From Rhodosorus marinus CCMP1338 (Eukaryota; Plantae; Rhodophyta), in NCBI GenBank assembly GCA_029953675.1, contig JAMWBK010000001.1, forward strand, positions 2,170,001 through 2,234,000: 64,000 nt of DNA, read 5' to 3'. The translations under genes and the position numbers were made by a program. The notes below the pieces were generated by a model. That model made no database searches and had not been told where the DNA came from. It worked only from the letters and a program-made list of their open reading frames with translations. The stretch's first letter is position 1; the number at the start of each line of letters is the position of its first letter. Shown here piece after piece: positions 41,423 to 61,355 of the stretch.

Positions 41423-44100
41423 TTGAGAATCTCCCGGGAGCTCCAGCGTATATGCTAGATTACCAATTTTTTCGTAGAATTTTAAACGGTCCGACATATC
41501 TGGGCCGAAAAACTTTTGAATCTGGGAGTTGAAGAGTCCGTGTTGACAAGAGCACATATTCGCCTGGTTCAAAGTGGAGGTCTCTTTGTTGACAAGAGCA
41601 CATATTCGCCTGGTTCAAAGTGGAGGTCTCTTTTGCCTCGATCATAGTAGAAGCGTTGGCGTTCTTGGTTGGCGCGGGCTAGGTCTCGTTGGTCCTTTTG
41701 GGGTTGTAGCAGGACCGTGGCGGCTTCAGGTATTGGTAGTGAACGGTCTCGGTCATCTGGGACTTTAAGGTCGGGAGGTATTGTCGGGTTCTTTCCATAA
41801 GTCAACTCGAAAGGGGAAAACTGCGTCGCTTCCGAGATCTGACGATTGCACACCAGCTCTGCAATCGGTAGGTCTTCTGCCCAATTCGTTGCAGACGAAT
41901 TACACCTCAGGGACGTCTCCAGCGTCTGATTGATTCGCTCTGTCTGTCCGTCTGTCTGTGGATGATATGCTGTACTCAGGTTTTGCCTTACTTGCAGCAT
42001 CTTCAACAATTCCCTCCAGAAAAATCCCGTAAATTTTATGTCTCGGTCAGAAATGATGTCTCTAGGTATACCAGCGAACCTAACCCAATACCCAATGACG
42101 TAAGAACAGCTTCGCGGTTTGTTGCGCCGTCGCCGTTGTCGTTGTCGGTAGGAAACGGGCATAACTTTGTGAACCGATCGACGATCACGAAGATCGCGTC
42201 GAACCCGTCCTCGGTTAGAGGTAGGCTGACAATGAAATCCATCGATGCGGATTGAAATCTCCCGTCTGGAACAGGCAGTGGGTTCAACTTTTCCGCTGAG
42301 TGTCGGAGTGGTTTTTGCCTCTGGCAAACTTCGCAAGTTCTTAAGACTTTCTCTATATCCTGCTTCAGGGTTGACCAATAGTATTTCCTCTTAATCAGGT
42401 TCCGGGTTTTCGTTACGCCAGGGTGTCCTCCGGTTGGCTCTTCATGATAGCTTCGTAGGAGAGCGGGTCCGAGACGTTCCGAACCCAAATCCTGTTATGC
42501 AAGAACAGGGTATCGTTCCTTCGAGTGAACCCTTGGGCAGCATACTTCTGGTCTTCCCGGTACACCTCACTGAATTCTGGGTCCTGAAGGTAAGCCTGCT
42601 GCCAGTTGATGTCGTTGTTGATCGACGAGGTTGCCAAGTGTTGGATGGCATGCCGACTTAACGCATCGGCGATATCCTCCTTGACGTTTAGTAAGCTCCT
42701 TCTGCGAGTGCAGGAATCTCAAAGGGTTGTGATCTGTACGAACCGCAAACTCGACCCCCTCCAGATATGTACGCCAGTGTAGGGCTGCAGCGGCTAACGC
42801 GAACAACTCTTGTTCATAGGTTGAGTAGTTTTCCTCTGCTTCGGTAAACCTTTTCGAGTAGTACGCGATCGGGTGTTCACCGTCGTCAAAGGTCTGAAGA
42901 AGTACAGCTCCTACGCCCTTGTTGCTGGCGTCCGTACACACAATGAACCCTTTTCCGAAGTCAGGGTTGTGCAAAACTGGTTCGTTTGATAGTCAAACTA
43001 TAGAAAGCTTTTTGCTGCTGTGCTCCCCACTGAAACTTAACTCCCTTTTTCGTCAACTCTGTCAACGGTGCCGCAATTAGGCTGAATCGCGATACGTAAT
43101 TTCGTAGGTAGCCCGTAAAACCCAGAAAGGATCTGACGTCTTGAACATTCTTCGGGGTTCGCCAGTTTTTGAGAGCAGCTACTTTGCCGGGGTCCGGTCG
43201 CCGTTTCCCGCTTCCAACTAGGTGACCCAAATACTTCGTCTCGGGAACTCCAAAAGTACACTTTGATAGCTTGGCAAACAATTTATGTTTGCGTAGTTTG
43301 TTGAACACTATACCCAGGTGCCTTCGGTGTGTCTCCAGGTTCGGCGAATAAATGACGATGTCGTCGAAGAAAATCATGACAAAGTCATTAAGCTCGTTGA
43401 AAAAGATGTGGTTCAAAAGTCTGGTGAACACTGCCGGTGCATTTGTCAGACCGAATGGCATGACAAGCCATTCGTATAGTCCGAATGGTGTTGTGAATGC
43501 CGTCTTCTGGATATCCTCCTCTATCACTCTTAGTTGCCAGTATCCACTCCGTAGATCGACCACACTGAGGTAAGATGCGGTGCCCAACGCATCGAGGCAA
43601 TCATCAATCCGTGGCGGATTCGTTTGATTCGCAATTGTCTGCCGGTTCAATCTCCTGTAATCAATACACAGCCGCTTACCGCCATCCTTTTTGTCAACAA
43701 AAAGGCAGGGAGACGCGAAAGGAGATGAACTCGGCCGAATCAGCTTTCTCAGTAACAAGTTCTGTAGCTGTTCCTTTAGTTCGCGTTGGTCTGGGAGATT
43801 CATCCGGTATGGTCGTTGAGCCACTGTTTCTGCTCCCGGTCGTAGCTCGATTTCAAAGTTAACCTCGCGCCATGGAGGTAGCTCATGAACTTCGTCGGCG
43901 AATACCGTTTCGTATGTTGAGGTGATCCAAGCTTCCAACTCCATAGCTTCTTTCTTTCGTGTTGCTTCTTGGGTTTTCACACCCGGTTTTTCTTGTTCAA
44001 TTGTTTCTGGTGTAACTTGTTCTGGTTCATTTTCTGGTTTCTTTCCGGGTTGTATTATGGTTTCAGGTATCATTCCGCCTGAGTTCAACTTCCTCCGAAA
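41138..44100 (-). mobile_element. Degenerate Ty3/Gypsy chromovirus pol (RT, RNase H, integrase, chromodomain), frameshifted
   Basis: [88 protein letters not shown] 46-bp tandem duplication lies at 41541-41632. Confidence 0.95.
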
Positions 44101-45026: not shown

Positions 45027-47240
45027 ACGGCGCAAAAGCCATTAGTGTCCAACAGAAGAGAAGGCGCAGTTAACTAGAAATTCTTCGAGTAAATCCGACT
45101 CGTTCGGGGATGGTGGTGGTTCTTCGCGTAAATCGGACGTCTTCAGGCAAGAGTTAGAGGCGATTTGTACTCCTCATTCTATTTTGCCCCCCTTTTGCCT
45201 GACCTTCGGCAAGCCTGGGACTCGACGAGTACGTATCTCCTCACGCCCCAGCTGGAAATCTTGAACAGCCTGTCCACTTCGAGAGGTGCGCCTTTTTGCT
45301 TTCCTTCTAGTCTGCTTGGCTTTCTCACTGGCCCGGCAGTTTGGGGCAAGTCTGTCTGGTACAGGTCTCAAGGACGCTCTGCTGATCTTCAACGGGGTGG
45401 AGCTGTCCCCATTGTATCGTTCAGTTGATTGGCCTTTCCTTTGCTGCTCTACACCTCTCTATACAATGTTTCGCTTTGTACGCTCTTGGTTGCTGCAGTC
45501 CCAGCGCGATGATGTACATAAAAAGGTTACGAATGCCTCCGGACCAGGAGCCAGACCGTCACAAAGTACTACGGGATTTTCACGCCTGCTCAGGATATTA
45601 CTTCGTTGTCCTCCTGAACAAGATCCTCCCTTCCTCCCTGCTTCCAATGAACCCCCGGCAGCTTTTGATTCCAAAAAGATTTAACTTCACAACAACACGA
45701 AAGCGGAAGCGTCAATGGGTCGACATAGGACAGCTCAGGACAGCTTCAGGACATTCAGATCCCCAAATCACTCTTCCCCCCTTGAAAAATTTCTCTTGTC
45801 AAAGGCCAAGACATGAAAATAAAAATATTTTTGGTTTATCAAACCCATTTTCCATCGTAGTCAACACCCCACATATACTGCCAGGCCATTGACTTCCACA
45901 ATACAAATTCTACAAATCCAGACCAAAATATGTGGTCCCACCCGTCCGCTACAAAGATCCTCCTGACCATTATCGTCAGTAATACTCATAATTTAATTAT
46001 AAAATCTATAAATAGAATTAAAGGCATATGACGGAAGGGGGGGGGAAGAAGTATGCTCTGTCCCGTGTAACCCATCCAAAAGAGGGACGGGGCAGGGGGG
46101 GTTGAAAAGCAAAAGAATGAAACAAAAAATATCTGCAAATGGTACTCCTGAGCCTCCGCGAACCCTGGCCCCGAAAACCCAATCCTCAAAACCATGAAAT
46201 TCTATTGTTTGTTTGAGGAAGAGGAGGAGCGTGGTCTGTTGCAACCGCGCAGACCCCCCCTCCCCGGGGGGGGGGCTGGAGATGTAAATCGGTCGACGAC
46301 TTCCAGGAATCTTACAATTTTATTCTATTTCAAAGGGGAAAAAAAGATGCAGGAAAACCTACGCACCACCAGTAAAGAACCCTGAAAATCGCGTGAGAAA
46401 GCAGACACCGCCGGGGAGGGGTTAGGAAAAAATAGGCCCATGTAATATTGGAAGAAGCAACTTGGCCCATAAAATGGACCCAACTGGACAGCTTTCTAGA
46501 AGGCCCAAATCATGATTCCGAAAAAAGGCAAAAAAAGGGAATCATGGCTTTTTCTAGGGCCACGGAATGGCCGGAATGGCGTAAAAAGCTGGATTTCATT
46601 TTTCGCTTTGTTTTGGGAATGGGTCCTCGTACATAAACAATTCCATTTTTGGTGGTAAAATAGGGGGGTATTTTGGCTGCGGCGGTGAGGAGAGAAGAGG
46701 GGGTGTTGAGTTTCGGGGGTCAGGGAGGGGGGGGGGTTCTGGTTGGGGAGTTCTTGACTGGGTTGGAAGAGCGGGGTTTCCGGGGGGAAGGTCTGTATGT
46801 TTGTCTTGGGAAGTGGGAGAGACGGGACAGAGAGACACTCGCGGAGGGGAGAAGGCTTGAGGTTGCTTAATAGTGTGCCAAGGAGGAAGGAGGATTCGTT
46901 GGGCTTTCTTGGAGGGTTTGGGGGTGGGTGGGGGGGAGGGAGGTGGAGTTGGGAGGGGGTGGGAAGGGTTCTAGGAGGGGAGCGTTTAAGGCTCGAGTAC
47001 GTTTTCTCTTATTTAGTTTGGTGGTTTGGTTGTTGAGAGAAGGTTGTCGGTGGGAGGGAGGCTCTTTCGCGTGGCTTTTCGTTGGTTTGTGACTTGTTTG
47101 ACGCATGAGGGGTTCAGGATAGCGGTTTATCTGTTGGTGTTGGTGCCTACATGTGCGAGTTGGGGCGGGGCTTGTTTGAAGCGTCCGGTCTTGTTTGTTT
47201 TATACTTCAGTTGGTTTATTAGGATATTGACTTGAACAGC

Positions 47241-49049
47241 ATGGGATCTGTCGAGGATGGTACCGCAGATTTCGCGCCAGCGTTGGGTGGATCGAGGTCG
47301 GATCTGGGAGTAGGAGAACAGGATGTAGATGCGGCAGTGGTTCGCCAGGTGGAGTTTTACTTAAGTTGGAGAAATTTGCAAACGGACTACTATTTGAAAG
47401 ATAGAATGACGACGGACCATTGGGTTCAGCTTCAACTTATTGTCGACTTCCCGAAAATGCAGGCGTTTCGAATATCCAGCGTTGAAAATCTTGCACGAAT
47501 TCTACAAGAAAAGTCAGCGAAATTGGAGGTTAACCTTAGCACACTCCAGGTCCGGCCGATATTTCTGGTGCAGGATACAAAACGAAGCGTGTTGATTCTG
47601 CGAGATATAGAGAGCGGAACTTCTGAGCAGGAAATTCGCGACTTGTTCGACGGCGTCGAGAACTGCCCGCCAATATACTCCATAAAGCCGGAAGTCGCGA
47701 ATACTTGGTTCGTAACTTTTGATACAGAGGAAGGGGCGGTCCTGGCTTTTGAACTTACGAAGAAGTTGCACTTCAAGGATCAGCCTGTGAAGGCACGTGT
47801 TAAGAACACTTCGCGCGTCAACCCAAGGGCGGGCGCGAGCTATGTGGAGCCTGTTGCGTTGCCGGTTGGTGAGCTACCTCAGCCCGCAACCCCTACATAC
47901 TATGCTCCTCCTTATTATCAGAGAGGTGGGTTTTCAGGGCCTCTACCCCAGGATCCAGTGAGCGCACCAGCCGTGACCGGTGCAATCCCCATGGTTCAAC
48001 ACCAGAGAAGACCATCCCGTGGTGGACTTAGTCCACAGCCGAACCACAGGAGCTCACCTAGTTCGCAGACCCGAGGTCAAGGCCCTGCTGGTGGAGTCCC
48101 TGGGACAGTGGGCGGAGCGGAGAGGGGCACTTCAAGCCACAACATGAGGCAGAATCAGCGTTTGAGCAGACAAGCAAACGCATCGAAGGGAGGGCGCCCA
48201 AAAGGAAAAAGGAATCGCTTCCCTGATGGCGGAGAGAACAAGGGTTCCGATTCAGCAGCCGAGAAGCCGAAGCAGGACGTGAGCTTTACACCGATTAACT
48301 TTCCACCTCTCGGAAAAGAGGATACACCGCAGAACGAAGAGAAAGAGCCAACTGAGGCCAAGGATACCACGGAGGTTAAGGATACCACGAAGGTTAAGGA
48401 TACCACGGAGGTTAAGGATACCAGGGAGGTCAAGGAAGTCAAGGAAGTCAAGGAAGTCAAGGAGGTCAAGGATGTCAAGGATGTCAAAGAGGTCAAGGAG
48501 GTCAAGGAGGTCAAGGAGCCTGTGGTGAACGTCGTAAAGGAATCAGTAGATAAGTCTAGCACGTCTTCGGTGGATAAGGTTGCCAACGATGTCCCGGGAG
48601 CTGGGTCTGACGATGACAAAAGAGCAAGCAGGAGTAGTTCGGAATCGGGGGCGAATGGCAGTGCGAAGACCTATGCATCTATCCTCCTCGCTGCAAAAGC
48701 AGCGAAGCAACAAGTACCAGTGCAAGATAACCCATCAGGGACGCAAGCTCATGCGAGATCAAATGATGTGGCTAGTGCACAGAAAGAGAAAGAGAGTGTA
48801 ACCCCTACCCGAGATGCTCCTGATCCAATCAAGGAAAAGGAGGAACAGAAGCGCGAGACAGGCGGAACTAATAATCTTAATACTAATCGAGGCGTGCCCT
48901 CTGCAGGGGCATCTGGTGACTCTCCAGACGAGCATGGGGTTGCGGACGTGAAACTCGAGGTGACCGAAGAGGCCCGCCCTGTATCTGTTTGGAGCAACCT
49001 GCCCAGATCTGTACTTGAAGCCCCTTCATCCCAGGCGCAGACGCAGTAA
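47241..49049 (+). CDS. LARP4: La-related RNA-binding protein, LARP4-like (La motif + RRM, long disordered tail)
   Basis: RQVEFYLS..NLQTDYYL..M....V.L.LIVDFPKM (La motif); RSVLILRDI..GTSEQEIRDLF...NTWFVTFDTEEGA (LARP4-type RRM); NFPPL and TYASIL motifs. Confidence 0.85.
   Translation: MGSVEDGTADFAPALGGSRSDLGVGEQDVDAAVVRQVEFYLSWRNLQTDYYLKDRMTTDHWVQLQLIVDFPKMQAFRISSVENLARILQEKSAKLEVNLSTLQVRPIFLVQDTKRSVLILRDIESGTSEQEIRDLFDGVENCPPIYSIKPEVANTWFVTFDTEEGAVLAFELTKKLHFKDQPVKARVKNTSRVNPRAGASYVEPVALPVGELPQPATPTYYAPPYYQRGGFSGPLPQDPVSAPAVTGAIPMVQHQRRPSRGGLSPQPNHRSSPSSQTRGQGPAGGVPGTVGGAERGTSSHNMRQNQRLSRQANASKGGRPKGKRNRFPDGGENKGSDSAAEKPKQDVSFTPINFPPLGKEDTPQNEEKEPTEAKDTTEVKDTTKVKDTTEVKDTREVKEVKEVKEVKEVKDVKDVKEVKEVKEVKEPVVNVVKESVDKSSTSSVDKVANDVPGAGSDDDKRASRSSSESGANGSAKTYASILLAAKAAKQQVPVQDNPSGTQAHARSNDVASAQKEKESVTPTRDAPDPIKEKEEQKRETGGTNNLNTNRGVPSAGASGDSPDEHGVADVKLEVTEEARPVSVWSNLPRSVLEAPSSQAQTQ
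48354..48518 (+). repeat. Coding minisatellite: 18-bp (EVKDTT) units grading into 9-bp (EVK/DVK) units
   Basis: Directly visible within the LARP ORF. Confidence 0.95.
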
Positions 49050-50468: not shown

Positions 50469-51875
50469 ATGATCTCGGCGCGGAGGAGAGTGAAAGGTGA
50501 GTAGGGATTTATCGCTTGCTCGCAAGTCGGTGTCCAGATGGGTTGACCTGTTTGCTCCCGGGTTTTTCATGTTAAGGTACGGGGCATAAGGCGGTTCAGA
50601 ACATGAAGCCGGGGAGCGCGAAATCTAAGGCTCCAAACAGAGGTAAGCTATTTCACTCTCCGCTCAGTCGCTTGAGAGCTTGTCTTGTGTTGATACAGTG
50701 TTTGCTCGAATTCGAACAGGGCAGAAGCCCGATGCTGGCAGCGGGAAGATTGCGAAGAGAGTCCGAGGTGATTCGTTTTTCGATTCGCTTCTACGCAAAA
50801 TTTCTCATGCTTCAGCGCTTTATCTCAGTCTAAACTTTAGCCCTTGTTGTGTCTCGGTCAGAGGGGGAATCCGCGAAGAAAACGAAATCGAAGACGGCAG
50901 GCATAGTCACCGCAAAGAAGAAGGCGACTGGAGCGCCGGAAGGCGAGTGGTTTTCACTTGCTTTTCTGAGTTTGTAATATCTATCTCATCTTGTTGAGTT
51001 CCTTCATCTTATCAATTTAGGAAAGAAGAAGAGGGCTAAGAGATATACTGAAGTTGAGAAACTGGAATCGGGTGACCTCATTGACGATGGAGAGGACGTT
51101 GACTTCGTTCCAGATGATGTCCCTGTGAAGGAGGAACCAGAAAAGAAAAAGAAAAAGAAGAGTAAAAGATCGAAGCGAGAGCAGATAGAGCAAGAGGAAG
51201 ACACGGCGCAGGGGCCGGCAGTTATCTATGTTGGGCACATTCCACACGGATTCTATGAAGATCAGATGAAGGAGTACTTCTCGCAGTACGGCAAAGTACG
51301 TTTGGGACCTTTGGTTTTTTTTTTTTCGTTGCTTTTTGTTGCTTGAGGCTCGTCAGGCGGGTGCTGAGCACTTGCCGTGCTTTCGTGTGCTAGGTTGAGA
51401 GAGTCAAATTGTCACGCTCAAAAAGGACCGGCAGAAGTAAGGGCTATGGTTTCATCGAGTTCGAGTCCAATTCCGTGGCGAGCATTGCAGCTCAGAGTAT
51501 GAACGGGTACCTAATGTTCGGACAGGTGCTCGACGTTCATGTGGTTGAGCCTGAAAAGGTAGAGGCAAATTTTGGTCGCTCGTAATCCATTTAGGCGTAG
51601 TTGACCGAGCCGCTGTTGTTCCCGCTTCGCCTGTCCAGGTCCATGCGGAGCTTTTCAAGGGAACCTCAAGAGTCTTTCGCACCGTTCCCTGGCGAGTAAT
51701 CGATAGGAAAAGGAGAAACAAAGTTCGATCGGATGCAGACTTGCAGCGGATACAGAAGAAACTTACGACGAAGGAGCGCAAGCGGCGTGAGAAGTTGACA
51801 AGTTTGGGCATTGACTACGACTTTCCTGGCTATGAAGCAGAGGCTAAAAAAGCGGAGAAACAGACGAAAAAGTGA
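50469..51875 (+). CDS. NOP15: Nucleolar RRM protein NOP15/NIFK, multi-exon; 5' exons tentative
   Basis: VIYVGHIPHGFYEDQMKEYFSQYG|K...LSRSKRTGRSKGYGFIEFE..VA.IAAQSMNGYLMFG..L.V, VHAELFK, LGIDYDFP. Confidence 0.92.
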
Positions 51876-52204: not shown

Positions 52205-55026
52205 CTATGCACCAGCCTTGACCCATTCCTCAACGCCATTTTCAATCTCCTCGTCCCTGAAGAGAATCGTTCTGAGAAAAGCAGCCTTATCGCATGGTGG
52301 GAGGAGACACAAATCCCTAGCCGAGATCTCCGACTCTTCACAGCCGGTCATGTCCCTGGCGCAGCGCCAAAACGTTGGGAATCCTTGCCTCCCTTTCTCC
52401 CAGTAGAATGGGGCAAGGTCTCCCGTGCTAAGTGCCCCGTCGAAGTCCGAGTCCAGAGCCTTGAAGAAGTAGTTCATCGCGGACACAGTTGAGGGATCCT
52501 CGCAGGCGAGGAAGAGTCTCGCGTACTCGCCAATACTCATTCTGCCCTTGCCATGTCCACAATAAGTTTTGAAAACAGCATGCAACGCCGCACTTGTCAA
52601 GGGACATCCGGATTGACCACAGCGCACCATAATCTTCTCCGTAGTATACGGGGTCCCCTTGTCATCAATAAATATGGACGCCTTTCGAAAGCCGTTCATG
52701 ATCCTTTCCAGGTTCTCATTCTTCAGACTTTGCATGACTCCGCTATAGACATTTGCCTCAGCCGCGACTATCGACGAGCAGATCTGAACGGGTTAGTCGA
52801 TTACACAATGAGGGTCAGCGTTGATTCACGGGCTAGCAATCACCAGCCTCCACGATGTGAACCAAGGAACTTACCTGTGCCTTTTTCGCTTCGCTCAGGG
52901 TATAGCCTTCAAGCTTTCCGTTCACACTGTAGCTCAGAACCGCGGATAGTAGCTCTGTTTTGAAATTGGATCCGAATAGGTTTTTCTCCTGCAATTGTGC
53001 CAGAACCAAGTTTAAAGCTGATATTCGAACTCTGCTTTCACCCTTCCTCCTGAGTATATTGAAAAACCGCGCTTCGATCTGTGCGTTCTGAATATTAGAT
53101 CTCCAAAACTTGTCAAACTCCTCCACTCCAACTTCGGACTCGTTGACGTCATCTCTAGACTGCCATCCACGCACGCTCCTGAAAAACGCTTCAGATACGG
53201 ATGCCGGCAGCCCACATATGGACGCAATGGGTTGGAAATCGGCCAACTTCACGGAACCTCCATTCCGCTGGAAGATCATCTGAAGAGCGGGCTCTTCCAG
53301 ATGGCATCTACCCAATCGACTCAAGTTTTGATTCAGATATCTATTCCTTATCGTTTCAAAGTTAATCTCTCGTCCCCTCTTTGGGGCTGCCAATCGTGAG
53401 CCACGACGTTGGGCTGCCCCATTCTCTATCCACGAGACGGGCTCATCGCGAGATCGATATTTGGCTGCCAAGTTTCTCACGACCAACGGGCACACTCCGC
53501 TCAACGGCTCGCGCAGGAACAGGTTCGCCCCATGCCTCAGGCAGGATCCAGCAGATTCGGCGTCAGACGAAGATCCAACCACAACAATCGGGATGCTGCT
53601 ATTCAAAGCCCTCACTTCTCTGACAGTCTCAAGATCCGTCGCTTGGACAAGCACGACGTCCATTCCACAGGCTTGATTCAAGTCTACGCGAATATGATGA
53701 GAACGATTTCTTGCGCTTAGCGGATTTGAACAGTTATTTCTTTAAAACGATTGTTCGGTCTTACCAGTTTCGCTTTTCTGCAGAATACGAACTACACTCA
53801 GCTCTGCATCATAGTTCAGCAGCGCCTCAGCATTTATTCCGAAGCTCGTGCGAAGCCACAACAGAGCTACGCGGTAACGAATTTCCTCACTCTGAGACAA
53901 GGAAGGCCCGCCATCAGTCAGACAGACAAGAACCATGTACACTGCAAGTCAAAGGTAGTGCACAACCTACAGATCTTATTCTTCTCAATGACCGGTTCAC
54001 CCTGTCCTCAATCCAGTTTACATGAACACTTCTTCTTCGAAACGCAGGTGGTAGTAGGTCTGGCGCATGTAGGTGCGTTCTGTACTTCGCCACCAGCTTC
54101 GCAGTAGCTGGGTATGTAAACGTGCTCAAAGTATGGCACTCAAGAAGTGGCGTGACATCCAGAAAACCGTTCAGTTCGTTACCGTTCAGTTCGTTTCCGC
54201 TCAGTCTCAGGGACTTCAACAATTTGCACCTGATCGTGGAAGCAAGAATCCTTCAGCCGCGGACACCCCAATTCTGCTTTCTCAATTGGTGCGCTTACTT
54301 CCTCAGCGGCTCCAGCTCCAATGAGAACGTGTCAATCGCGTTGTTCTCCAGATACAACGAGCGAAAGGACGAACATTCTGACAGAGGCGAAAGGTCAATC
54401 TCACCAATGCGATTGTTGTGCAACCAAAGCTTTTCCAGCTTTGAACATCTCGCGAGTGGTTCCAAATGGATAGAAGCGAGTTGGTTCCCGTTCAGACAAA
54501 GCGTTTCCAACTCGGCGCAGAGCGACAGAGCGCTTAAGTCAATCTCCGTTAGCAGATTTGCGGCCAGCGATATACTCTTCAGGGACATAGGGCAGATCGT
54601 TGCCAGGCAATCCAGAGAGATATGCCGTATGGGGAGATTACTTATGCACAGAGATTCATCATGCCGGTGTACAGATACAGGGTCAATATCCTCATTATCA
54701 GTTTCAACATAAATGAAAACGTTGTCGAAATCTGCGCTTCTCAACGAGCACATAGACACAGACCCTGGCCAATAAAAACCAAACGGAGAAGCAAGAAAGC
54801 GAAACAAGAAAAACAAACAAAAACAAAAAAAAACCACCGCTCGTTAGTCCAATGTCAGACCCCCCTCCATTTCACATAAACTTGCCATTCAAATGATCTA
54901 GGGCGAACACAAAGCCAAACTCAGACACGCAATTATGAACAATATCTCACCCTTCAACCCAAAGTGCTCCTCAAACATATGCGGTGGGAGGCCCTCCCTC
55001 TCGAAAGACACTTCAAGCTCCACCAT
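52205..55026 (-). CDS. 771-aa LRR + pseudo-receiver + PP2A B''-like EF-hand fusion protein, 6 exons (55026-54951, 54764-54299, 54229-53971, 53891-53765, 53683-52875, 52783-52205)
   Basis: All five GT-AG introns splice in frame (2316 nt in total). LRRs LKSISLAANLLTEIDLSAL / LEKLWLHNNRIGEIDLSPL; REC-like MDVVLVQ..IPIVVVG..CLRHGANLFLREPL; B''-like GRMSIGEYARLFLACEDPSTVSAMNYFFKALDSDFDGALS. Confidence 0.8.
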
Positions 55027-59829: not shown

Positions 59830-61355
59830 ATGCTTGTTGGAGTCGTAGGCTGCTGTCATGGAGAGCTTGACGTGATATACGATACCTTAACTGAAGCCGA
59901 GAAGTAAGGAGAACTCTTTCACCTCCTGTGTGCTCTTCGTTCGTTTCTACGGATACCTATTTACGAGTTCCATCGTTTTTTAAGGCGCTTGGACCGGAAG
60001 ACAGACGTTCTACTGATCTGTGGTGACTTTCAGTCAGTTAGAAACGAAGATGATCTGGAATGCGTCGCATGCCCTCCAAAGTATCGACAGATAAACACCT
60101 TCTACAAGTACTACAGTGGCGAAAAAACAGCACCGGTACTCACAATCTTCGTTGGGGGCAACCATGAAGCATCCAACTACCTCCAAGAGCTTCCCTACGG
60201 AGGCTTTGTAGCCCCGAACATCTACTACATGGGATACGCAGGTCTGTTTCATTCCAAGACAAGTCTCTGGAAACCGGAGAGATACTAAGTTGGGAAGCTA
60301 TGATTATACCCCCGTTGTTCAGGAGCGATCTCAGTGGGAGGCCTTCGAATCGCTGGGATAAGCGGAATCTACAAAAACCATGATTACAATACGCCGCACT
60401 TCGAGCATCCTCCTTACACGGAGTCATCATTGCGATCTGTTTACCACACAAGAAAAGAGGACGTTGAACGATTATGTACGCGACCCGTCTTGAAGAAGCC
60501 CGCAGACTAATCCACATGTCTTCTAACACGAAGCCTCGGCCGTTTGTTCCTGAAGGTAGAATTACCGGTCAGGTCGATATTTTCCTAAGCCACGACTGGC
60601 CTTCACAGATCACACAATATGGTAACCTGCAGAAGCTTCTGCAGAGGAAGCGGTTTCTCAAAGAGGATATCGAAAGGAACGCGCTTGGATCTCCCCCGCT
60701 GGATGAGATCATCTTGAGGCTCCAGCCTTCATATTTCTTCGCCGCCCATCTGCACGCCAAGTTTCCTGCAATCGTCCCTCACGGTGAGGGAAAGGAAACG
60801 AAGTTCCTAGCTCTGTCTAAACCGCTTCCAGGGCAGGACTTTCTCCAAGTCGTTGAGATCGACAACGGGAAGGTTGCTCGACCCGAAGCCACTGACGCAG
60901 AGATGGAAGTTCTCCGAGATCTAGAGTGGCTCACAATCTTGAGAAATCCCAATGCCGTACGTTTCTTCTTGCACAGCTCATTGGTGTCTACACCTTGCGT
61001 GGCGAAAGCTAAGCACGAGATCTTCTTTCCTCAGGATTCGCTCGAGGAGTCGCTAGTCAAAGAAACTCTGGACGCCATCGGTGGTGAGGGCGGCCTCAAA
61101 GTAGAAAAGTCAGGCTTCGTTAGAACGGCAAGAACGTATGACGCAGCTAGTCCAATCCGCGGTAGGAGGCCGATGGCGCTGAACGAGAACCCCCAAACTT
61201 CGTGGCTTTCTGAGAAACTTGATCTTAAAGTGGATACTAGCTCTGTTCATCGTAGTTCTGGACGCGCAGCTGCTCCTGCAGCGGAAGGAACAGGCTTGGA
61301 CGTCCAAGACGAACCAAACCCTGAGGAGATCGACATAGATCTCGACGACGTGTAA
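59830..61355 (+). CDS. DBR1: RNA lariat debranching enzyme, multi-exon
   Basis: [92 protein letters not shown]. Confidence 0.97.

What the first reader, a model, noticed from the sequence alone, without database searches (positions are those of the whole stretch)
52205..55026. LRR - pseudo-receiver - PP2A B'' fusion: a two-component fold attached to a eukaryotic phosphatase-targeting subunit
Seen: five separate ORF-track fragments join through five canonical GT-AG introns with matching phases into one 771-aa ORF, which is unlikely by chance. Established: B''/PR72 subunits have an EF-hand region with the signature (K/R)MSY.DFVWF...EED......YWF...D.DGDG.LS, and the C-terminal exon follows it. 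Receiver domains use an acidic pair after beta1, Asp at the end of beta3, Thr/Ser at beta4 and Lys-Pro after beta5. Here these positions read WL, Q (MDVVLVQ), G (IPIVVVG) and EP (NLFLREP), so the fold pattern is kept but phosphorylation chemistry is lost. The LRRs (IDLSPLSEC..L..L.L.NN.I) have a prokaryote-like consensus. Inference: a modular PP2A adaptor in which the LRR and pseudo-REC domains sense or scaffold and recruit PP2A. I know of no characterised protein with this architecture.
Basis: partly seen in the sequence, partly recalled or inferred. Interest (0 to 1): 0.85.

Follow-up and report, generated by a model that had tools for sequence, protein, structure and literature searches.

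The report
Red-algal LRR–pseudo-receiver–PP2A B'' protein
This is a real six-exon red-algal gene whose protein joins leucine-rich repeats, a receiver-fold domain that cannot be phosphorylated, and a very divergent copy of the PP2A phosphatase B'' targeting subunit; the family is found across red algae, no paper I could find describes it, and whether it still binds PP2A is untested.

Summary
On the minus strand, 55026..52205, six exons joined by five GT-AG introns give a 771-aa ORF. It is 93% identical, end to end and across every junction, to a transcriptome-derived Rhodosorus marinus protein.

All three domain calls hold:
- LRRs pass Pfam thresholds.
- The middle domain models as a (beta-alpha)5 receiver (pLDDT 94.8; TM 0.80 to solved receivers). 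It lacks the acidic pair, the acceptor Asp, the Thr/Ser and the Lys.
- The C-half is homologous to the whole PP2A B''/PR70 core (profile E 2e-16; Foldseek E 1e-12, and only PR70/PR72 match).

The protein is not unique. About 35 clusters share the architecture, and every named member (14) is a red alga. They are annotated as 'Internalin-A', 'EF-hand protein' or 'hypothetical'. Pfam sees only the LRRs, and I found no paper on the family.

PP2A binding is plausible but unproven. Kept: the EF2 loop, the Asp equivalent to PR70 D443, and the R288 position. Lost across the family: the IPxFYFP latch, R398, C439/Q440 and EF1. The 'prokaryote-like LRR' claim is not supported.

Verdict: a new variant of a known kind, of moderate interest.

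The parts
52205..55026 (-). Whole coding region (ATG 55026 to TAG 52207-52205), six exons, 771 aa
   Evidence: Splice model; 93% identity end to end with transcript-derived P0001
54951..55026 (-). Exon 1 (aa 1-25)
   Evidence: junction GLKG|SVSM is identical in P0001
54765..54950 (-). Intron 1, 186 nt, GTGAGA..CAG; holds an A/C-rich low-complexity run
54299..54764 (-). Exon 2 (aa 26-180), most of the LRRs
54230..54298 (-). Intron 2, 69 nt, GTAAGC..CAG
   Evidence: junction EPLR|KCKLL is identical in P0001
53971..54229 (-). Exon 3 (aa 181-267), last LRR, LRR cap and conserved LPPA(F/L)RRR..(V/I).W motif
53892..53970 (-). Intron 3, 79 nt, GTAGGT..CAG (donor corrected with the ortholog)
53765..53891 (-). 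Exon 4 (aa 268-309), beta1-alpha2 of the pseudo-receiver
53684..53764 (-). Intron 4, 81 nt, GTAAGA..TAG
52875..53683 (-). Exon 5 (aa 310-579), rest of the pseudo-receiver, linker, first lobe of the B'' core
52784..52874 (-). Intron 5, 91 nt, GTAAGT..CAG
   Evidence: junction KKAQ|ICSS is identical in P0001
52205..52783 (-). Exon 6 (aa 580-771 plus stop), second lobe of the B'' core with EF2
54007..54657 (-). LRR domain, aa 62-255 (spans intron 2): about six 24-residue repeats LxxLxLxxNxLxxIDLxPLxxCxx plus a C-terminal cap
   Evidence: Pfam LRR_4 42 bits and LRR_8 36 bits, both above their cut-offs; LRR_8/LRR_4 in 34 of 34 family members
53442..53891 (-). Pseudo-receiver domain, aa 268-390 (spans intron 4); W279-L280, Q323, G346 and E368 stand at the four catalytic positions
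   Evidence: Family profile against PDB receivers, E 4.8e-7; model pLDDT 94.8 with (beta-alpha)5 topology; Foldseek TM 0.80 and rmsd 1.9 A to 3jte; Pfam Response_reg only 18-22 bits against a cut-off of 30.2
53301..53441 (-). Linker, aa 391-437, with the motif REINFETIRNR (aa 414-424, 53372..53340) about where canonical B'' carries the IPxFYFP latch
   Evidence: low-confidence helix in the model
52208..53300 (-). Divergent PP2A B''/PR72-type core, aa 438-771 (spans intron 5)
   Evidence: Family profile against PR70 4mew, E 2.1e-16, over profile positions 12-329 and chain residues 21-336; canonical-B'' profile scores the window protein 74 bits; model pLDDT 88.7; Foldseek hits only PR70/PR72, E 1.3e-12, TM 0.64-0.67
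52418..52453 (-). EF2 loop DSDFDGALSTGD, aa 690-701: positions 1, 3, 5 and 6 are canonical, Asp instead of Glu at position 12
   Evidence: D/D/D/G conserved in the family; position 12 is Asp in 35/35 family members against Glu in 32/36 canonical B''
52352..52354 (-). Asp723, equivalent to PR70 Asp443 of the helix that contacts the catalytic subunit
   Evidence: Asp in 35/35 family and 36/36 canonical sequences; role of D443 taken from PMC3698643
54166..54205 (-). 15-nt tandem repeat (2.7 copies) that adds GNELN to the last LRR relative to the MMETSP ortholog

Best explanation
The locus is one six-exon nuclear gene of a Rhodosorus-type red alga. It encodes a 771-aa member of a family whose named members are all red algae. 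The parts run in this order: about six 24-residue leucine-rich repeats with a conserved cap; a receiver-fold domain that has lost all four phosphotransfer positions (a pseudo-receiver); a 45-residue linker; and a very divergent but full-length PP2A B''/PR72-type core whose second EF-hand is intact and whose first is degenerate. Shown here: the gene model, the three folds, the homology and the taxonomic spread. Inferred: the protein most likely works as a B''-type regulatory or targeting subunit. In this reading the C-half docks on the PP2A scaffold through the EF2 face in a metal-dependent way. It would touch the catalytic subunit through the helix that carries the invariant Asp723. The LRR and the pseudo-receiver would take the place of the variable N-terminal extensions that give animal B'' subunits their targeting: the LRR as the partner or substrate-binding surface, and the pseudo-receiver as a phosphorylation-independent adaptor or dimerisation module. 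My confidence in the architecture is about 0.95. My confidence that it really assembles with PP2A is about 0.55.
For: Gene model: five GT-AG introns in phase and 714/771 identity, colinear, with a transcriptome protein. LRR: Pfam hits above threshold, found in 34/34 members. Pseudo-receiver: profile hits to solved receivers at E 4.8e-7; AF2 model pLDDT 94.8 with E-H-E-H-E-H-E-H-E-H order; Foldseek gives 359 hits at E<1e-3, and receiver domains make up nearly all of the 50 listed, best TM 0.80. The acidic pair is absent in all 35 members; the acceptor, Thr/Ser and Lys positions are not conserved and are lost in this protein. B'' core: phmmer to PR70 at E 1.4e-5; family profile to PR70 at E 2.1e-16 over about 320 residues; reciprocal canonical profile at 74 bits; model pLDDT 88.7; Foldseek gives PR70/PR72 only at E 1e-12 to 3e-8, and the next fold comes at E 2e-3. 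Retained PP2A-relevant positions (residue roles from PMC3698643): the EF2 ligands D401/D403/D405/G406 are conserved; the D443 equivalent is Asp in 35/35; the R288 equivalent is R/K in 28/35 (K577 here); the R398 equivalent is Lys (K687) in this protein. Variable N-terminal extensions as targeting modules are the norm in the B'' family (established knowledge on PR72/PR130/PR70).
Against: No physical evidence of PP2A binding exists. The canonical latch IPxFYFP (PR70 I125/F128; F128A weakens assembly) is absent here. The family has only a looser hydrophobic-xx-hydrophobic-R motif, or IPPL in the Porphyridium clade. R398 (R398D abolishes assembly) is S/D/L/H in most family members. C439 and Q440 of the helix that binds the catalytic subunit, and R362, are not conserved. 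The EF1 loop is degenerate. The family scores about 40-90 bits on a profile where true B'' subunits score 680-770. It forms its own clade apart from 37 canonical B'' sequences. Pfam's B'' model PF17958 reaches E 0.008 in only 1 of 34 members. I could not determine whether red algae also keep a canonical B'' subunit. The B'' model was built with 6 canonical sequences in its alignment, which may pull it towards the PR70 fold.
Confidence: 0.6

Rival explanations
1. The C-half descends from a B'' subunit but no longer binds PP2A. The protein would then be a stand-alone Ca2+/Mg2+-responsive LRR scaffold, and the B'' core would serve only as a metal-sensing helical module.
For: Family-wide loss of the IPxFYFP latch, R398, R362 and C439/Q440, and a degenerate EF1. 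Extreme divergence from canonical B'' (74 against about 700 bits). A separate clade. A family-specific Glu-to-Asp change at EF2 position 12 in 35/35 members; from general EF-hand knowledge this shifts metal selectivity.
Against: The whole B'' core is kept over about 330 residues across the red-algal classes sampled, not just the EF-hand. The Asp equivalent to D443, whose known role is contact with the catalytic subunit, is invariant. R288 and the EF2 face that meets the scaffold are retained.
Confidence: 0.3
2. The LRR plus receiver module came into the red-algal ancestor from bacteria. This is the stronger form of the reader's 'prokaryote-like' hint.
For: Nearly all of the best structural and profile matches of the middle domain are bacterial receivers. 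Internalins are among the LRR hits.
Against: Solved receiver structures are overwhelmingly bacterial, so the hit list is biased. Animal LGR4/5 score as well as internalins. No non-red-algal protein in the searches covers LRR plus receiver together. The module contains spliceosomal introns and occurs in every red-algal class with named members. No phylogeny of these two domains was made.
Confidence: 0.12
3. The middle domain is a working phospho-acceptor receiver in a eukaryotic two-component relay.
For: A receiver fold with high confidence. A few relatives do have Asp at the acceptor position: G. sulphuraria, P. purpureum, Cyanidium, P0063 and P0067.
Against: This protein has Gln at the acceptor position, Trp-Leu instead of the acidic pair, Gly for Thr/Ser and Glu for Lys. 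The Mg2+-binding acidic pair is missing in all 35 members.
Confidence: 0.03
4. The 771-aa ORF is an artefact that joins neighbouring genes.
For: None beyond the general risk of in-silico splicing. My own first intron-3 choice was wrong.
Against: A transcript-derived ortholog is colinear over all junctions. 34 full-length proteins from genomes and transcriptomes of other red algae have the same domain order.
Confidence: 0.02

Closest known systems
PP2A B''/PR72 family regulatory subunits (human PR70/PPP2R3B, PR72/PR130/PPP2R3A, G5PR; plant B'' alpha-epsilon and TON2/FASS; Ectocarpus BASELESS)
   Same: Homologous over the whole two-lobed EF-hand core. Intact EF2 loop. Invariant Asp at the PR70 D443 position. 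R/K at the R288 position. A variable N-terminal region ahead of the core.
   Different: Only 17-18% identity. About 74 bits on a canonical profile against about 700 for true members. No IPxFYFP latch. R398, R362, C439 and Q440 are not conserved in the family. EF1 is degenerate. Asp instead of Glu at EF2 position 12. The N-terminal region consists of folded LRR and receiver domains rather than the N-terminal extensions of the animal subunits. A separate clade whose named members are all red algae.
Pseudo-receiver / atypical receiver domains (plant PRR/TOC1, cyanobacterial KaiA and CikA PsR, CpaE/TadZ N-terminal domains)
   Same: A (beta-alpha)5 receiver fold that has lost its phosphotransfer residues. 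CpaE/TadZ-type domains (4dn6, 4dad, 4lda) are among the top structural matches. The beta4-alpha4-beta5 region (IPIVVVG...GA..FL.EPL) is the best conserved part.
   Different: Fused between an LRR and a phosphatase-subunit core. No CCT, kinase or ATPase partner domain. No sequence relationship closer than to generic receivers.
LRR proteins that target phosphatases (SDS22/PPP1R7 and SHOC2 for PP1; PHLPP with LRR fused to a PP2C domain)
   Same: By analogy only: an LRR solenoid used as the partner-binding surface of a Ser/Thr phosphatase complex.
   Different: Those act on PP1 or PP2C, not on PP2A, and none carries a B'' core or a receiver fold. No specific homology was shown here beyond generic LRR models. 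This comparison rests on my own knowledge, not on a test.

Membership tests
PP2A B''/PR72 regulatory subunit | Homology to the conserved B'' core spanning both EF-hand lobes | tested here: met
   Family profile against PR70, E 2.1e-16, about 320 aligned positions. Canonical profile against the window protein, 74 bits, two colinear stretches. Foldseek E 1.3e-12, TM 0.64-0.67, with PR70/PR72 as the only significant fold.
PP2A B''/PR72 regulatory subunit | Passes the curated family model (Pfam PF17958 EF-hand_13 with PF13499), as canonical members do | tested here: not met
   No PF17958 hit for the window protein. It appears in 1 of 34 family members, at E 0.008. All listed canonical B'' carry PF17958.
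PP2A B''/PR72 regulatory subunit | Functional EF2 Ca2+ loop that faces the scaffold subunit (PR70 D401-E412, D403) | tested here: met
   DSDFDGALSTGD. Positions 1, 3, 5 and 6 are conserved in the family. Position 12 is Asp in 35/35 members rather than Glu. Metal binding itself was not measured.
PP2A B''/PR72 regulatory subunit | EF1 loop | tested here: not met
   NGKLEGYTLSEA aligns to the PR70 EF1 loop, but its ligand positions are not conserved in the family.
PP2A B''/PR72 regulatory subunit | N-terminal hydrophobic latch IPxFYFP (PR70 I125/F128, AB-1 interface) | tested here: not met
   Found by my motif scan in 24 of 36 canonical sequences. The window protein has REINFETIRNR at the comparable place. 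Only the Porphyridium clade has IPPL.
PP2A B''/PR72 regulatory subunit | AB-2 contact residues R288, R398, R362 and W277 | tested here: inconclusive
   R288 is K577 here (R/K in 28/35 members). R398 is K687 here but S/D/L/H in most members. R362 and W277 are not conserved; W277 is also only 11/36 in canonical sequences.
PP2A B''/PR72 regulatory subunit | Helix that binds the catalytic subunit (PR70 439-446, D443) | tested here: inconclusive
   Asp723 is invariant (35/35) and a Trp five residues upstream (W718 here) is conserved in at least 90% of members, but C439, Q440 and K446 are not.
PP2A B''/PR72 regulatory subunit | Physical assembly with the PP2A A and C subunits | not testable with these tools
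Response-regulator receiver domain (REC, PF00072) | (beta-alpha)5 flavodoxin-like receiver fold | tested here: met
   pLDDT 94.8, E-H x5. TM 0.80 and rmsd 1.9 A to 3jte; receivers make up nearly all of the listed hits.
Response-regulator receiver domain (REC, PF00072) | Sequence-profile membership | tested here: inconclusive
   Pfam 18-22 bits against a cut-off of 30.2. The family profile reaches solved receivers at E 4.8e-7.
Response-regulator receiver domain (REC, PF00072) | Phosphotransfer residues: acidic pair after beta1, Asp at the end of beta3, Thr/Ser at beta4, Lys at beta5 | tested here: not met
   W279-L280, Q323, G346 and E368. The acidic pair is absent in all 35 members; Asp at the acceptor position occurs in only a few. 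The domain is therefore a pseudo-receiver.
Leucine-rich repeat proteins | Tandem LxxLxLxxN repeats that pass curated models | tested here: met
   LRR_4 42 bits and LRR_8 36.4 bits, cut-off 27 for each; 34/34 members.
   The repeats are 24 residues long. The best PDB matches mix animal LGR4/5, LRIG1 and bacterial internalins at similar scores. No subclass-specific test was available.

The most novel reading that the evidence does not exclude
All red algae carry a lineage-specific PP2A holoenzyme type. Its B'' subunit is hard-wired to an LRR recognition domain and a pseudo-receiver, and its assembly is gated by an EF-hand with an Asp at position 12 (altered Ca2+/Mg2+ selectivity). It may be the only B''-type subunit that red algae have. 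That would be a one-polypeptide link from LRR-based partner recognition to PP2A dephosphorylation, using a two-component fold that no longer needs phosphorylation.
Probability: 0.25. Interest if true: 0.7.

Novelty: new variant of a known kind. Interest (0 to 1): 0.55.

Why it matters
PP2A specificity comes almost entirely from its B subunits, and outside animals, plants and yeasts these are poorly charted. This is a conserved family whose named members are all red algae. In it a recognisable B'' core has been joined to two folded signalling modules, LRR and a receiver fold. Routine annotation misses this: Pfam reports only the LRRs, and databases call the members 'Internalin-A', 'receptor kinase' or 'hypothetical'.

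If the protein does assemble with PP2A, it gives red algae their own way of aiming a major phosphatase. Red algae have a reduced signalling and cytoskeletal toolkit (general knowledge). It would also be a clean example of a two-component fold re-used as a phosphorylation-independent adaptor in a eukaryote. The family-wide Glu-to-Asp change in the one intact EF-hand is a testable lead on metal control of assembly. If the protein does not bind PP2A, it is an example of a B'' core taken over for another job. Either result can be tested in Cyanidioschyzon merolae, if the unnamed cyanidiophyte-clade members prove to include a Cyanidioschyzon ortholog, or in Galdieria or Porphyridium.

Tried and rejected
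(1) My first intron-3 donor (agg|GTGAAC at 54000) gave 761 aa. I rejected it because the ortholog reads ...VN(Q/R)xLR(K/R)IRS|(R/S)EEIRY. The correct donor is at 53970.

(2) A frame-1 stretch inside intron 3 (VYMVLVCLTDGG) looked like a receiver beta1 with a partial acidic pair. It needs a 25-nt intron and is absent from the transcript-derived protein, so I rejected it.

(3) A word-indexed homolog search with the C-half alignment A2 returned nothing, probably because low-complexity words swamped it.

I therefore used the 93%-identical ortholog P0001 as first row for that search and for both structure predictions. The models are of the ortholog, not of the window protein itself.

(5) I tried to learn whether red algae also have a canonical B''. 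The last homolog search, with a canonical profile, listed only the 120 best hits, and every one that carries an organism name is a land plant or a green alga. The question stays open.

(6) Literature searches for the architecture, for red-algal PP2A B subunits and for six accession or locus names gave nothing relevant.

(7) The linker motif as an equivalent of the IPxFYFP latch is only loosely conserved and differs between clades. I do not count it as evidence.

(8) A loose RVxF-like reading of the conserved RRR..(V/I).W motif after the LRR cap does not fit the PP1-docking consensus spacing. I did not pursue it.
Full report
GENE MODEL. The feature lies on the minus strand. Six-frame translation shows the ORF pieces, and I placed the splice sites by eye and by script.
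- Exons: 55026-54951, 54764-54299, 54229-53971, 53891-53765, 53683-52875 and 52783-52205.
- Introns: 186, 69, 79, 81 and 91 nt, all GT..AG with matching phases.
- My first donor for intron 3 was wrong (761 aa). It was corrected once a homolog search returned P0001. This is the Rhodosorus marinus MMETSP transcriptome protein A0A7S3EDK9, 766 aa.
- BLASTP of the final model against P0001 gives 714/771 identities with one gap. All five exon junctions are read through without interruption.
- The gap is a GNELN duplication caused by a 15-nt tandem repeat at 54166-54205.
- P0001 comes from assembled transcripts of another Rhodosorus isolate. This is transcript-level support for every junction, although not from this strain.
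- Neighbouring genes are ordinary eukaryotic ones: a reverse-transcriptase ORF, a La-domain protein, an RRM exon and a DBR1 domain.

LRR DOMAIN. The window protein passes Pfam LRR_4 and LRR_8 (42 and 36 bits, cut-off 27). By eye there are about six 24-residue repeats, LxxLxLxxNxLxxIDLxPLxxCxx, from aa 62 to about 213. They are followed by a conserved cap that ends in LPPA(F/L)RRR..(V/I).W. PDB sequence hits mix animal LGR4/5 and LRIG1 with bacterial internalins at similar scores, so I see no basis for calling the repeats prokaryote-like.

MIDDLE DOMAIN. Pfam Response_reg is sub-threshold (18-22 bits against 30.2).
- A profile of eight family members reaches solved receiver domains: RpfC at E 4.8e-7, then NtrX, NtrC and others.
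- An AlphaFold2 model of the ortholog's aa 262-386, built on 35 family sequences, has pLDDT 94.8 and pTM 0.87. Its topology is strictly alternating E-H x5.
- Foldseek against the PDB gives 359 hits at E<1e-3, and receiver domains make up nearly all of the 50 listed. The best is 3jte, TM 0.80, rmsd 1.9 A over 123 columns. Known atypical receivers of CpaE/TadZ type are among the top hits.
- Across 35 family members the acidic pair is never present. The acceptor position is Q/R/E/H/Y/K/S, with Asp in only a few members. The Lys is not conserved.
- The domain is a pseudo-receiver. Its best conserved stretch is IPIVVVG...GA..FL.EPL, which falls in the beta4-alpha4-beta5 region of the model.

C-TERMINAL HALF. 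Four lines of evidence tie it to the B'' core.
- The single sequence already hits PR70 (4mew, 4i5l) at E 1.4e-5 through the EF2 region, with a second weak colinear stretch.
- A seven-sequence family profile hits PR70 at E 2.1e-16 over profile positions 12-329 and chain residues 21-336, that is, nearly the whole crystallised core. It hits PR72 at E 5e-14.
- In the reverse direction, a profile of 24 canonical B'' subunits scores the window protein at 74 bits. The two colinear stretches are aa 438-540 and 643-709. Canonical proteins score 680-770 bits on the same profile.
- A model of the ortholog's aa 400-766 has pLDDT 88.7 and pTM 0.84. Foldseek finds only PR70/PR72 chains at E 1.3e-12 to 2.7e-8 (TM 0.64-0.67 over about 340-356 columns, 17-18% identity). 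The next fold, calaxin, comes at E 2.4e-3. Caveat: its alignment of 14 family and 6 canonical sequences may bias it towards the PR70 fold.

DOES IT KEEP WHAT PR70 USES TO BIND PP2A? The PR70 holoenzyme paper (PMC3698643) defines three contact sets:
- the latch I125/F128;
- the scaffold contacts W277, R288, R362, R398 and D403;
- the catalytic-subunit helix C439, Q440, D443 and K446. F128A and R398D cripple assembly, and D443K abolishes substrate-specific activation.

I compared these positions in an alignment of 35 family members, 36 canonical B'' and PR70.
- Retained: EF2 ligands D401 35/35, D403 33/35, D405 31/35, G406 29/35.
- Retained: the D443 equivalent, 35/35 (Asp723 here).
- Retained: the R288 equivalent, R/K in 28/35 (K577 here).
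- Not retained family-wide: R398 is S/D/L/H in most members, although it is Lys687 in this protein.
- Not retained: R362, C439, Q440 and W277. W277 is also variable in canonical B''.
- Not retained: the EF1 ligand positions.
- The canonical latch IPxFYFP was found by my motif scan in 24 of 36 canonical sequences. It is replaced by REINFETIRNR here, by (I/V)(D/N)F..LR.R in several clades and by IPPL..LRR in the Porphyridium clade. I do not count this as conserved.
- One family signature stands out. EF2 position 12 is Asp in 35/35 members against Glu in 32/36 canonical sequences. From general EF-hand knowledge this should change Ca2+/Mg2+ selectivity.

DISTRIBUTION. An exhaustive HMMER search with a receiver-plus-B'' profile against 1.84 billion cluster representatives found 1030 hits.
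- Roughly 35-45 clusters match the whole profile and carry long N-terminal extensions.
- Canonical B'' subunits match only the C-half of the profile, at 60-110 bits.
- The 14 members with a source name are all red algae:
  - Galdieria partita, G. sulphuraria and G. phlegrea;
  - Cyanidium caldarium;
  - Porphyridium purpureum and P. aerugineum (the latter with two paralogs);
  - Erythrolobus madagascarensis (two paralogs);
  - Purpureofilum apyrenoidigerum, Compsopogon caeruleus, Porphyra umbilicalis and Rhodosorus marinus.
- Their database names are 'Internalin-A', 'Receptor kinase', 'EF-hand domain-containing', 'Response regulatory domain-containing' and 'hypothetical'.
- All 34 full-length members scanned have Pfam LRRs. 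Only one reaches Response_reg and only one reaches the B'' model PF17958. This explains why the architecture has gone unnoticed.
- In a neighbour-joining tree of the C-half the 35 family sequences are monophyletic against 37 canonical B''.
- Text searches for the architecture, for red-algal B subunits and for six accession or locus names found no paper. The brown-algal BASELESS paper deals with a canonical B'' and does not mention red algae.

INTERPRETATION. Shown: the gene model, the three folds, the homology of the C-half to the B'' core, the loss of receiver chemistry and the red-algal distribution.

Inferred: the protein acts as a B''-type PP2A subunit, with the LRR and the pseudo-receiver as targeting or adaptor modules.
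- For: the entire B'' core is retained across all the red-algal classes with named members, not just an EF-hand. The Asp that contacts the catalytic subunit is invariant. EF2 and the R288 position, which face the scaffold, are retained.
- Against: the latch, R398 and half of the catalytic-subunit helix contacts are lost, and overall divergence is extreme.
- I put PP2A association at about 0.55. I put a neofunctionalised, PP2A-independent metal-sensing scaffold at about 0.3.

OPEN QUESTION. I could not establish whether red algae also possess a canonical B'' subunit (one search was uninformative). This is the cheapest decisive computation left.

NOVELTY AND SCORE. The protein family already exists in databases as unnamed or misnamed entries, so the sequence is not new. 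The recognition of an LRR, pseudo-receiver and B'' architecture as a conserved family whose named members are all red algae appears to be undescribed. It is a new variant of a known kind (B''-family protein), not a new kind of system. Interest is 0.55: a clear, testable and lineage-defining find for PP2A and red-algal biology, but without functional evidence.

Noticed in passing
window 54166-54205 (minus-strand CDS, aa 193-203): A 15-nt tandem repeat (2.7 copies) inserts an extra GNELN into the last LRR relative to the MMETSP Rhodosorus marinus ortholog. It is an in-frame length polymorphism inside a repeat.
   Followed up: partly
window 53892-53970 (intron 3): The intron contains an in-frame-looking stretch (VYMVLVCLTDGG) that mimics a receiver beta1 strand with a partial acidic pair. 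It is not in the transcript-derived ortholog and would need a 25-nt intron.
   Followed up: yes
window 52418-52453 (EF2 loop) and family alignment: Position 12 of the one intact EF-hand is Asp in 35/35 family members but Glu in 32/36 canonical B'' subunits. This family signature may shift Ca2+/Mg2+ selectivity.
   Followed up: partly
family members P0005, P0032, P0057, P0063, P0067 (not in the window): A few orthologs or paralogs (G. sulphuraria, P. purpureum, Cyanidium and two unnamed ones) keep an Asp at the phospho-acceptor position of the pseudo-receiver, although all lack the acidic pair. This hints that the ancestor was a true receiver.
   Followed up: partly
family members other than Rhodosorus (e.g. 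P0004, P0021, P0042, P0057): Most members have a long N-terminal extension with a conserved (R/K)xDS(L/V)xxLVxLA motif ahead of the LRRs. The Rhodosorus proteins, including the window protein, lack it.
   Followed up: no
window 54007-54060 (aa ~238-255): A conserved LPPA(F/L)RRR..(V/I).W motif closes the LRR cap in nearly all members. Its function is unknown, and it does not fit the PP1 RVxF spacing.
   Followed up: no
window 42961-44088 (-): A 375-aa ORF with a strong reverse-transcriptase domain (RVT_1, E 2e-31): a retrotransposon remnant or copy upstream of the region.
   Followed up: partly
window 47232-49049 (+): A 605-aa ORF with a La domain (E 3e-13) and a long (K/D)(E/T)VKEVKEV low-complexity repeat. 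A 154-aa antisense ORF of SLT repeats is its mirror image.
   Followed up: partly
window 51409-51585 (+) and 60474-61355 (+): An RRM-domain exon lies just downstream of the gene's 3' end, on the other strand. Further along the window, beyond the gene's 5' end, there is a lariat-debranching-enzyme (DBR1) C-terminal domain ORF. Both are ordinary housekeeping neighbours.
   Followed up: partly
window 54802-54834 (intron 1): An A/C-rich low-complexity tract (AAACAAAAA-type repeats) inside the longest intron.
   Followed up: no
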